Assembly (NCBI GenBank): GCA_002269645.1
Contig: NIVC01000381.1
Coordinates: 186,001-250,000, forward strand
Reading direction: 5' to 3'
From: Macrostomum lignano
Taxonomy: Eukaryota
DNA length: 64,000 bases
The notes under the pieces are model-generated. The model was not told the DNA's origin and made no database searches. It was given only the letters and a program-made list of their open reading frames with translations. Each line of letters begins with the position of its first letter. The first letter of the stretch is position 1. The position numbers and the translations under genes are program-made. Shown here piece by piece: positions 379 through 1,714 of this stretch.

Positions 379-1714
379 ATGGGACACTCGTCTGCTGTCT
401 GCACTCGCTACCTGGGTCTGATGGCTATGCTGGTCGTCCTGGTGGCTGCGGCCACGGCTCACGGTGAGACCACTCGGGAGGGAGACTGAGATGCAGATAT
501 CAGAGTCGAGTGTGGGAACAGAGAGTAGAGAGTAGAGACTCCAGTAGAGAGTAGAGAGTAGAGTAGAGAGTAGAGTAGAGAGTAGAGAGTAGAGTAGATA
601 GTAGAGTAGAGAGTAGAGACTAGAGTAGAGAGTAGAGTAGAGAGTAGAGTAGAGAGTAGAGTAGAGAGTAGAGTAGAGAGTAGAGTAGAGAGTAGAGAGT
701 AGAGTAGATAGTAGAGTAGAGAGTAGAGACTAGAGTAGAGAGTAGAGTAGAGAGTAGAGTAGAGAGTAGAGTAGAGAGTAGAGTAGAGAGTAGAGAGTAG
801 AGTAGAGAGCAGAGTAGAGAGTAGAGTAGAGAGTAGAGTAGAGAGTAGAGTAGAGAGTAGAGAGTAGAGTAGAGAGCAGAGTAGAGAGTAGAGTAGAGAG
901 TAGAGTAGAGAGTAGAGTAGAGAGTAGAGTAGAGAGTAGAGACTAGAGTAGAGTCAAGTAGAGAGTAGAGACATGAGTAGAGAGTAGAGTAGAGTTTGAA
1001 AAGGAGGTAGTAGAGAGAGAGAGGAGACAATACAATGGTAGTTGATGAGACGTCTGGAATTCCAGTTATAAACCGAATTTTTCTACCTTTTGCTTGTTAG
1101 TCAAATCAGCATGAAGGCAAAGTTTTATTAAATTAAAGATTGCACAAGCTTGAGATGGCGTTGGTGATCAAGTCATCTGCGGCTCAGCCTCCTCTAATTT
1201 CGTTTAACGCTCCGCTGAAAAATTTGAAGCTGAGCAGAAAGCGAAGAAAACTTCGTTGAAATTGTCTTTTAGACACAATGACAGACAGACAGACAGACAG
1301 ACAGACAGACAGACAGACAGACAGACAGACAGACAGACAGACAGACAGACAGACAGACAGACAGACAGACAGACAGACAGACAGACAGACAGACAGACAG
1401 ACAGACAGACAGACAGACAGACAGACAGACAGACAGACAGACAGACAGACAGACAGACAGACAGACAGACAGACACATAGACAGACAGACAGACAGACAG
1501 ACATCAGAGGATTCAAAGTACAGCAAAAACCTTTTCAGACTCAAACAGCGCTGTGTCGGCCGCCGAGCAAGAACTGGAGAGTTCGGTTTCAACAAAGCGT
1601 TTCGCCGATTTTAGAAAAAGATTCGCCGACTTCAAGAAGAGATTCGCCGACTTTAAGAGATTCGCCGACTTCAAGAAGCGGTTCGCCGACTTTAAGAGAT
1701 TTGCTGACTTCTGA
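379..1714 (+). CDS. Prepro-neuropeptide (86 aa): signal peptide plus 6x FADF. Exons 379-463 and 1539-1714
   Basis: Exon 1 encodes [28 protein letters not shown] and ends at G|GTGAGA (phase 1). The acceptor CTTTTCAG| at 1538 restores the frame: [61 protein letters not shown]. Codons differ synonymously between peptide copies. Confidence 0.85.
522..1022. repeat. (GAGTA/GAGAGTA)n simple repeat in the neuropeptide intron
   Basis: Direct reading; explains artefactual ORF 620-1030. Confidence 0.95.
1281..1502. repeat. (GACA)n microsatellite
   Basis: Near-perfect tetranucleotide run; explains the TDRQ/SVCL ORFs. Confidence 0.97.

What the first reader, a model, noticed from the sequence alone, without database searches (positions are those of the whole stretch)
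379..1714. Hidden neuropeptide precursor releasing six copies of a non-amidated tetrapeptide, FADF (achatin-like core)
This gene is absent from the ORF track because it splices across two microsatellites. Joining the signal-peptide exon (379-463) to the CTTTTCAG acceptor at 1538 gives an 86-aa prepropeptide: signal, acidic spacer, then FADF x6, each preceded by KR/RKR/KKR, with the last ending at the stop codon (seen). Copies vary at synonymous positions (TTC/TTT, GAC/GAT, GCC/GCT, CGT/AGA/CGG) while the peptide is invariant, which suggests protein-level selection (inference). There is no Gly before the basic sites, so the product should be a free acid. Achatin (Gly-D-Phe-Ala-Asp) is likewise a non-amidated tetrapeptide, shares the FAD core, and has a D-residue at position 2 (established). 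I do not recognise FADF as a named peptide. It may be a divergent achatin or a new family, possibly with D-Ala2 (inference).
Basis: partly seen in the sequence, partly recalled or inferred. Interest (0 to 1): 0.88.

Follow-up and report, generated by a model that had tools for sequence, protein, structure and literature searches.

The report
Unannotated flatworm FADF peptide precursor gene
A small two-exon gene in the flatworm Macrostomum lignano, missed by annotation, most likely encodes a secreted precursor that is cut into six copies of the tetrapeptide FADF; it is a plausible new neuropeptide, but it is not an achatin, and there is no transcript or peptide evidence for it yet.

Summary
A signal-peptide exon (ATG 379, or the in-frame ATG 352) ends at a GTGAG donor (463|464). 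It joins in phase to a CAG acceptor (1538|1539) and gives signal peptide, acidic spacer and six FADF copies, each preceded by KR, RKR or KKR. The stop codon follows the last copy directly, and an AATAAA lies 104 nt further on.

The six KRFADF units all differ in DNA (7 variable columns, 11 differences), yet every difference is synonymous. No other frame is conserved, and no other repeat in this repeat-rich window behaves this way. This points to selection on the peptide.

The window is Macrostomum lignano. The only relative found is a UniProt 'Secreted protein' model of a paralogue. It shares exon 1 up to exactly this donor, but it splices to a different downstream exon (window 3025-3146). The FADF exon may therefore be an alternative terminal exon, or it may have been skipped by a gene predictor that masked repeats.

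Nothing in 1.8-5.8 billion proteins or in the searched literature carries FADF repeats. Achatin membership fails: there is no N-terminal Gly and the peptide does not end in an acidic residue. The closer resemblance is to the orphan non-amidated spiralian 'AxxxDF' peptides (ASWLDF, AKFNDF). Verdict: probably real, a new member of a known kind, moderately interesting, and no RNA or peptide evidence was available.

The parts
352..463 (+). Exon 1 coding part. The start codon is at 352 (as used by the paralogue's model) or at 379 (better Kozak context, A at -3 and G at +4). It encodes the signal peptide ...[18 protein letters not shown]|H and ends in phase 1.
   Evidence: the hydropathy maximum is 2.8 over [11 protein letters not shown], with small residues A-T-A before H; 34/40 identity to UniProt A0A1I8F9E3 'Secreted protein', and the similarity ends exactly at the donor; one of only two such candidate exons in 128 kb.
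464..1538 (+). Predicted intron (1075 nt), GTGAGA...CCTTTTCAG. It consists mostly of two simple-repeat arrays (520-994, period 12/31/67; 1280-1503, (GACA)56).
   Evidence: The read-through frame stops at 487-489, and the FADF frame has an upstream stop at 1478-1480 with no ATG after it. A cis-splice is therefore required.
1539..1714 (+). Exon 2 coding part: acidic spacer (H)[19 protein letters not shown], then six FADF copies with basic cleavage sites, then the TGA stop at 1712-1714.
   Evidence: GC at third codon positions is 0.64 against 0.40-0.42 at the other positions, matching neighbouring genes (0.59-0.74).
1595..1711 (+). FADF array: [39 protein letters not shown]. Units are 18 or 21 nt, with a 39-nt higher-order unit.
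   Evidence: all six DNA units differ, all differences are synonymous, and all unit lengths are multiples of 3.
1818..1823 (+). AATAAA, a candidate polyadenylation signal 104 nt after the stop. This makes the FADF exon a plausible terminal exon.
   Evidence: No AATAAA or ATTAAA occurs within 560 nt after the alternative exon's stop.
3025..3146 (+). Alternative or rival downstream exon. The acceptor TTTTTTCATTAAG|GA is in phase with the exon-1 donor. The exon encodes GGWSSTLYNAFTDKQLDSSPLPAAATAASVVCPLCSLPPL* and runs into a 16-nt minisatellite.
   Evidence: the tail of the paralogue's model A0A1I8F9E3 aligns here (18/40 identity, E 6e-4). This is far weaker than the match to exon 1 (34/40).

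Best explanation
This is an unannotated two-exon gene of Macrostomum lignano for a small regulated-secretion prepropeptide.

Proposed mechanism:
1. Exon 1 (352/379-463) supplies the start codon and a cleavable signal peptide.
2. It is cis-spliced (463|1539) across a microsatellite-filled intron to a terminal exon that carries an acidic spacer and six FADF copies.
3. After signal-peptide removal (around ATA|HD), a PC2-type prohormone convertase cuts after each KR, KKR or RKR.
4. A carboxypeptidase E-type enzyme trims the basic residues.
5. Because no Gly precedes the basic sites, the products are six identical free-acid tetrapeptides, Phe-Ala-Asp-Phe (monoisotopic mass 498.211; [M+H]+ 499.219). 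They would be released as an intercellular signal, most likely a neuropeptide acting on an unknown receptor.

Shown: the sequence anatomy, phase compatibility, peptide-level purifying selection and coding-like composition.
Inferred: use of the 463|1539 junction, the processing steps, secretion, and neuronal expression.
For: - Anatomy and frame.
- Selection on the FADF frame only. There are 11/11 synonymous differences in six units, and 0 of 200,000 random placements reproduced this. Analytically, only 9 of the 54 possible single-base changes in the unit are synonymous, so at least 8 independent events give about 6e-7, or about 1e-4 with transition bias and six frames (my calculation).
- One distinct hexapeptide in the FADF frame against 4-6 in the other frames.
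- Unique among 600 repeated 6-mers of a very repeat-rich window, and the only dibasic-flanked peptide array in it.
- Unit lengths of 18 or 21 nt differ by whole Lys/Arg codons.
- The stop codon directly follows the last copy, and AATAAA lies 104 nt downstream.
- GC3 of 0.64 and codon choice resemble neighbouring genes.
- The exon-1 peptide is 85% identical to a M. lignano protein that UniProt names 'Secreted protein', and the similarity stops exactly at the predicted phase-1 donor.
- Signal-peptide-like first exons are rare here: 2 loci in 128 kb.
- PC2-dependent prohormone processing is documented in flatworms (PMC2953531).
- Multi-copy, KR-flanked, non-amidated xDF peptides exist in other spiralians, and their dibasic cleavage is confirmed by mass spectrometry (PMC8557429).
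Against: - No transcript, junction read or peptide could be examined.
- No protein containing FADF repeats exists in 5.8 billion clustered or 1.84 billion representative proteins, which include transcriptome-derived ones. The gene is therefore neither annotated nor evidently assembled from RNA.
- The only public model of a relative joins the same donor to a different exon, homologous to 3025-3146, and skips the FADF region.
- The array has a 39-nt higher-order unit, so some of the synonymous differences are inherited rather than independent.
- Six copies in one genome is a small sample.
- The signal peptide was judged only from hydropathy, the -3/-1 rule and UniProt's name for the paralogue. 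It was not run through SignalP.
- Neuronal expression is an assumption.
Confidence: 0.62

Rival explanations
1. The FADF array is a non-coding minisatellite. It would lie in the intron, or after the real coding sequence, of a gene whose true structure is exon 1 + exon 3025-3146, as in the UniProt model of the paralogue. On this reading the FADF frame is a coincidence in a genome full of tandem repeats.
For: The window is saturated with micro- and minisatellites that give long spurious ORFs. TRF reports the array as an 18/21/39-nt tandem repeat. The paralogue's model A0A1I8F9E3 joins the exon-1 donor to the homologue of 3025-3146. No FADF protein is in any database searched.
Against: It cannot explain purely synonymous variation in one frame out of six. 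It cannot explain the whole-codon length differences, the stop placed exactly after the last unit, the coding-like GC3, or the uniqueness among 600 repeated peptide 6-mers. The alternative exon is poorly conserved (45% against 85% for exon 1), runs into a minisatellite and has no poly(A) signal nearby. A predictor working on repeat-masked DNA would be expected to skip a tandem-repeat exon (inference).
Confidence: 0.12
2. The gene and its processing are real, but the product is not a neuropeptide. It would be a secreted peptide of a non-neuronal gland (prostate or seminal fluid, adhesive, pharyngeal or epidermal gland), or an inert repeat spacer of a secreted protein. It may be one of two alternative 3' exons.
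For: Nothing in the sequence specifies neurons. Dibasic processing also occurs in non-neuronal secretory cells (established knowledge). The paralogue's model suggests a second possible 3' exon.
Against: Tandem identical short peptides between dibasic sites after an acidic spacer, in a precursor of about 90 aa, is the classic neuropeptide precursor layout. The nearest analogues (AxxxDF, achatin) are classed as neuropeptide precursors (PMC8557429). A tetrapeptide is too short for a structural or antimicrobial role (inference).
Confidence: 0.2
3. It is a divergent achatin precursor, and the peptide carries a D-residue at position 2 (F-dA-DF).
For: It shares with achatin the multi-copy, KR-flanked, non-amidated tetrapeptide layout and the letters F-A-D. 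Achatin-I is Gly-D-Phe-Ala-Asp (established knowledge).
Against: All achatin-type peptides read here start with Gly and end in D/E directly before KR (GFGD, GYGE, GISD). FADF starts with Phe directly after Arg and ends in Phe, so the FAD match is out of register at both ends. There is no sequence similarity outside the repeats. No achatin precursor appears among the phmmer hits.
Confidence: 0.04
4. Exon 2 is not cis-spliced. Instead it receives the M. lignano spliced leader, whose 3' end is ATG, and is translated from that ATG.
For: More than 10% of M. lignano transcripts are trans-spliced, and the leader ends in ...TTGCATG (PMC5173321).
Against: SL-ATG joined at 1539 (or at 1524) reads the +1 frame: [42 protein letters not shown].... 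That product has no signal peptide, and its repeat units are all different, so it is not the frame under selection. The FADF frame has no ATG of its own.
Confidence: 0.02

Closest known systems
AxxxDF (ASWLDF / AKFNDF) proneuropeptides of nemerteans and brachiopods (Thiel et al. 2021, PMC8557429)
   Same: A signal peptide and acidic spacer are followed by many tandem copies of one short peptide. The copies are flanked by KR or KKR with no Gly, so the products are free acids. The last four residues are aromatic-x-Asp-Phe (W-L-D-F, F-N-D-F, F-V-D-F, F-F-D-F, against F-A-D-F), in the same register at the C-terminus. MAFFT aligns KK-RFADF with KRAKFNDF. Dibasic cleavage of the Lineus precursor is confirmed by mass spectrometry. 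The family is orphan, with no receptor or function known.
   Different: The family motif is a hexapeptide starting with Ala (A-[SK]-...), whereas FADF is a tetrapeptide that lacks those two residues. No similarity is detectable outside the repeats. A profile of the family plus this protein recovers only one further nemertean-type ASWLDF precursor and nothing from flatworms. Four shared positions in a short peptide could be convergence.
Achatin (G-dF-A-D; spiralian GFGD/GYGE/GISD precursors)
   Same: Non-amidated tetrapeptide in multiple copies between KR sites, within a small precursor.
   Different: The N-terminal Gly and C-terminal acidic residue are both absent. The FAD match is shifted by one position. 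The D-residue and the receptor are untested.
Flatworm short peptides and prohormones (YIRFamide/FRFamide-type FLPs; Schmidtea spp/npp genes; Collins et al. 2010, PMC2953531)
   Same: Same phylum. These are small precursors processed by PC2. Tetrapeptide-sized actives are known in flatworms, and many 'spp' prohormones are lineage-specific.
   Different: The known flatworm families named there are mostly C-terminally amidated. None with an FADF or xDF repeat was found.

Membership tests
Achatin | Peptide begins with Gly directly after the dibasic site (G-x-x-D/E) | tested here: not met
   All six copies are R|F-A-D-F. The achatin precursors read here are KR-GFGD, KR-GYGE and KR-GISD.
Achatin | Tetrapeptide ends in an acidic residue directly before KR | tested here: not met
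   FADF ends in Phe, and Asp is the penultimate residue.
Achatin | Multi-copy, KR-flanked, non-amidated (no Gly before the basic site) | tested here: met
   Six copies with KR, KKR or RKR flanks and no Gly.
Achatin | D-amino acid at position 2; activation of the achatin-type GPCR | not testable with these tools
   Requires chiral peptidomics and a receptor assay.
AxxxDF (ASWLDF/AKFNDF) | C-terminal Asp-Phe free acid followed by KR, with an aromatic residue two positions before Asp | tested here: met
   F-A-D-F-K-R against W-L-D-F-K-R and F-N-D-F-K-R.
AxxxDF (ASWLDF/AKFNDF) | Hexapeptide with N-terminal Ala (A-x-x-x-D-F) | tested here: not met
   The peptide is four residues long. No Ala-x dipeptide lies between the basic site and Phe.
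AxxxDF (ASWLDF/AKFNDF) | Sequence homology detectable beyond the repeat motif, or intermediates in other taxa | tested here: inconclusive
   The alignment shows only repeat-level matches. The profile search finds one more nemertean-type precursor and no flatworm intermediate. phmmer finds no family member.
Generic proneuropeptide / prohormone | N-terminal signal peptide | tested here: met
   There is a hydrophobic core with KD 2.8-3.0, Arg in the n-region, and A-T-A at -3/-1. The near-identical N-terminus of the paralogue is named 'Secreted protein' by UniProt. SignalP itself was not available.
Generic proneuropeptide / prohormone | Repeated short peptide bounded by dibasic convertase sites, conserved at peptide level | tested here: met
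Generic proneuropeptide / prohormone | Spliced mRNA exists; peptide detectable; expression in neurons or endocrine cells | not testable with these tools
   No M. lignano RNA-seq, genome copies or peptidomes can be reached.

The most novel reading that the evidence does not exclude
FADF is a genuine flatworm neuropeptide, and it is one of two things. It could be the platyhelminth branch of the orphan AxxxDF family. That would make [W/F]-x-D-F-COOH an ancient spiralian signal, and it could be studied in a transgenic model animal. Alternatively, it could be a new D-amino-acid-containing tetrapeptide (F-dA-DF) with its own receptor.
Probability: 0.15. Interest if true: 0.6.

Novelty: new member of a known kind. 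Interest (0 to 1): 0.4.

Why it matters
If real, this adds an unannotated signalling-peptide gene to Macrostomum lignano, one of the few flatworms with working transgenesis and RNAi. The peptide is non-amidated and has no named counterpart.

It also illustrates how short, repeat-encoded precursor exons that sit between microsatellites escape annotation, through repeat masking and minimum-ORF-length cut-offs.

A link to the nemertean and brachiopod AxxxDF peptides would extend an orphan spiralian family to flatworms and provide a tractable system for finding its receptor.

However, lineage-restricted candidate peptide precursors are found by the dozen in every neuropeptidome survey. Without expression or peptide data this one is a solid candidate rather than a discovery.

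Tried and rejected
1. Word-indexed protein search with the 86-aa precursor. It returned only the exon-1 paralogue A0A1I8F9E3.
2. Exhaustive phmmer against 1.84 billion representatives. The nine hits are all translated low-complexity repeats (e.g. TCADYRK, IMFADLA, RWADLQK) with no signal peptide or dibasic logic, so I rejected them as homologues.
3. Profile of this precursor plus AxxxDF precursors. It found only one more nemertean-type ASWLDF precursor.
4. Exact-protein look-ups to reach the homeologous locus or transcripts. No comparative DNA could therefore be obtained.
5. Literature. 'FADF' with 'neuropeptide' gave no paper, and KRFADF appears only in an unrelated glioblastoma paper. Searches for Macrostomum neuropeptides gave nothing relevant. 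The supplements of the planarian peptidome paper that are held as text contain no DFKR, DFKK, DFRR or ADF string.
6. Rfam scan of the whole window: no hit.
7. Scan for other amidated or dibasic repeat precursors in the window: none.
8. Spliced-leader ATG model: rejected, because it reads the wrong frame.
9. Achatin membership: rejected.

Full report
**Observation.**
- An ATG at 379 opens [28 protein letters not shown]. The ORF then meets ACG|GTGAGA at 463|464; read-through stops at 487-489.
- After 1075 nt comes CCTTTTCAG|AC at 1538|1539. These 1075 nt consist mostly of a (GAGTAGA)-type array (520-994) and (GACA)56 (1280-1503).
- Exon 1 ends in phase 1, and 85 + 176 nt are in frame. The product is 86 aa: signal peptide, spacer [19 protein letters not shown], then [39 protein letters not shown], then TGA (1712-1714).
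- The FADF frame has an upstream stop at 1478-1480 and no ATG of its own, so it can only be expressed through a splice.

There are three refinements.
- An in-frame ATG at 352 (MLRTTQLST...) gives a 95-aa protein.
- A second acceptor at 1523|1524 is also in frame and would add AKTFS.
- AATAAA lies at 1818, 104 nt after the stop.

**Is it more than chance?** This window is extremely rich in tandem repeats that give long meaningless ORFs, so the null hypothesis of a minisatellite that happens to be open is a serious one. It fails on several counts.
- The six 18-nt KRFADF units are all different in DNA. They have 7 variable columns and 11 differences from consensus, and every difference is synonymous. 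None of 200,000 random placements of 11 substitutions was fully synonymous.
- The array has a 39-nt higher-order unit, so I also counted events conservatively. At least 8 independent events are needed, and only 9 of the 54 possible single-base changes in the unit are synonymous. That gives about 6e-7, or about 1e-4 after allowing for transition bias and six frames (my calculation).
- The FADF frame gives one distinct hexapeptide. The other five frames give 4-6.
- Unit lengths (18 or 21 nt) differ by whole Lys/Arg codons.
- This is the only dibasic-flanked tandem peptide array in the 64-kb six-frame translation.
- Among 600 clustered repeated peptide 6-mers, it is the only non-homopolymer in which all copies are identical as peptide and all different as DNA.
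- GC at third codon positions is 0.64, against 0.40-0.42 at the other positions. This matches neighbouring genes, which range from 0.59 to 0.74.
- A crude scan for 'Met + hydrophobic core + GTRAG donor' finds two loci in 128 kb counting both strands. One of them is this exon 1, which lies 1.1 kb upstream on the same strand and in the compatible phase.

**Organism and relatives.** The SLCO-type transporter ORF at 60300-62474 clusters at 90% identity or more with Macrostomum lignano proteins BOX15_Mlig013733g2 and g3. The window is therefore from this free-living flatworm.

The precursor has one relative in 5.8 billion proteins: UniProt A0A1I8F9E3, an 88-aa M. lignano 'Secreted protein'. It matches window 352-465 at 34/40 identity, and the match stops exactly at the predicted donor. 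This supports the signal-peptide exon, the ATG at 352 and the donor.

The tail of that protein (GGWSSTTLYMRSPDKHLDS...) aligns, at only 18/40 identity, to window 3024-3140. There, an acceptor TTTTTTCATTAAG|GA is in phase with the same donor. It gives ...TAH-GGWSSTLYNAFTDKQLDSSPLPAAATAASVVCPLCSLPPL*, which runs into a 16-nt minisatellite. So the only public model of a relative skips the FADF exon.

I see three readings of this:
- the predictor skipped a repeat-masked exon;
- the two exons are alternative 3' exons;
- the FADF array is intronic.

The third reading cannot explain the codon pattern. In addition, the alternative exon is much less conserved than exon 1 and has no AATAAA or ATTAAA within 560 nt of its stop. 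The matter can only be settled with RNA data, which I could not reach.

**Homology searches.**
- An exhaustive phmmer search of 1.84 billion representatives returned nine hits. All are translated low-complexity repeats with no signal peptide and no cleavage logic.
- No paper in the library contains FADF together with 'neuropeptide', and KRFADF occurs only in an unrelated paper.
- The protein is absent from the M. lignano annotations in the collection. This may be because it has fewer than 100 residues and is encoded by a tandem repeat (inference).

**Mechanism.** I propose the following sequence.
1. The 95-aa (or 86-aa) prepropeptide enters the ER.
2. The signal peptide is removed near ATA|HD.
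3. A PC2-type convertase cuts after KR, KKR and RKR. PC2-dependent prohormone processing is documented in planarians (PMC2953531).
4. A carboxypeptidase trims the basic residues.
5. With no Gly before the basic sites there is no amidation, so six copies of Phe-Ala-Asp-Phe-COOH result ([M+H]+ 499.2187). The last copy needs no trimming because the stop codon follows it directly.

The anatomy and the selection are shown. The processing, the secretion and especially the neuronal expression are inferred.

One alternative uses the M. lignano spliced leader, which ends in ATG (PMC5173321). Joined at 1539, it reads the +1 frame. That product has no signal peptide and its repeat units are all different, so I reject it.

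**Comparison with known families.** Achatin-type peptides are G-x-x-[D/E] between KR sites. The nemertean precursors read here give GFGD, GYGE and GISD, and achatin-I itself is G-dF-A-D (established knowledge). FADF lacks the N-terminal Gly and does not end in an acidic residue. 'FAD' matches only out of register. Two defining features were therefore tested and not met, so this is not an achatin, although it works like one as a multi-copy free-acid tetrapeptide.

A closer resemblance came from reading Thiel et al. 2021 (PMC8557429). Nemerteans and brachiopods have a lineage-restricted, non-amidated, multi-copy 'AxxxDF' family: ASWLDF in nemerteans, and AKFNDF, AKFVDF and AKFFDF in brachiopods. 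Its dibasic cleavage is supported by mass spectrometry in Lineus.
- Its C-terminal four residues, [W/F]-x-D-F followed by KR, are those of FADF in the same register, and MAFFT aligns KK-RFADF with KRAKFNDF.
- Against this, FADF lacks the N-terminal Ala-x dipeptide that names the family, and there is no similarity outside the repeats.
- A profile search recovered only one more nemertean-type precursor and no flatworm intermediate.

I treat this as the closest known analogue, with perhaps a one-in-five chance of true homology.

**Verdict.** The gene is probably real (about 0.6-0.7), and the exon is very likely protein-coding. Its status as a neuropeptide is plausible but untested. The achatin and D-Ala ideas are not supported. 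The novelty class is a new member of a known kind, namely a lineage-restricted multi-copy peptide precursor. Interest is moderate (0.4). It would rise if junction reads and the peptide are found, and further if a link to AxxxDF or a D-residue is shown.

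Noticed in passing
window 3025-3146 (+): This is a phase-compatible alternative exon. It is homologous to the C-terminal tail of the M. 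lignano UniProt model A0A1I8F9E3 and runs into a 16-nt minisatellite (3118-3389). It implies either alternative 3' exons or a mis-prediction in the public annotation.
   Followed up: partly
window 60300-62474 (-) and 63237->64000 (-): Two tandem, apparently intronless SLCO4A1-like organic-anion transporter genes (Kazal + OATP + MFS domains). A UniRef model of 1245 aa (P0002) appears to fuse the pair. The next-best M. lignano relative outside that cluster is only 54% identical.
   Followed up: partly
window 55030-55530 (+), 57557-57889 (+), 55565-56230 (-): A nuclear-receptor gene, with a zf-C4 DNA-binding exon and a ligand-binding-domain exon. A retroelement integrase remnant (Integrase_p58_C, SH3_Tf2-1) lies on the opposite strand between them.
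   Followed up: partly
window 41543-43687 and 45445-47519 (-): A tandem duplication of about 3.9 kb. Each copy carries a signal-peptide-bearing Cys-containing ORF (43247-43687 and 47046-47519). The first had no Pfam hit; the second was not scanned. Each copy also carries Ala/Pro-rich low-complexity ORFs.
   Followed up: no
window 23752-26607 (+): A single-exon 951-aa leucine-rich-repeat protein. It has a hydrophobic stretch that looks like a transmembrane segment and a Q-rich tail.
   Followed up: partly
window 33923-35877 (-): Two adenylate-kinase-like domains lie in adjacent ORFs. The ORFs are extended or interrupted by an (IYLS)n microsatellite, so the gene model there needs care.
   Followed up: partly
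window 6587-8134, 10120-14606, 19665-22841, 29928-31529: Kilobase-scale minisatellites give 500-1500-aa spurious ORFs. The acidic EQQEQATD-repeat ORF at 29928-31529 has non-repetitive flanks and might be a real gene.
   Followed up: no
window ~39820 (-): This is the only other 'Met + hydrophobic core + GTRAG donor' candidate first exon in the window (MKAFCLLLALVILEPIIGKQQLK...). It may be the start of another small secreted-protein gene.
   Followed up: no
window 16938-18116 (-): A Q-rich 392-aa ORF with a weak match to a TEAD-interacting motif (PF15238, E 5e-4, below the curated cut-off). It might be a transcriptional co-factor.
   Followed up: no
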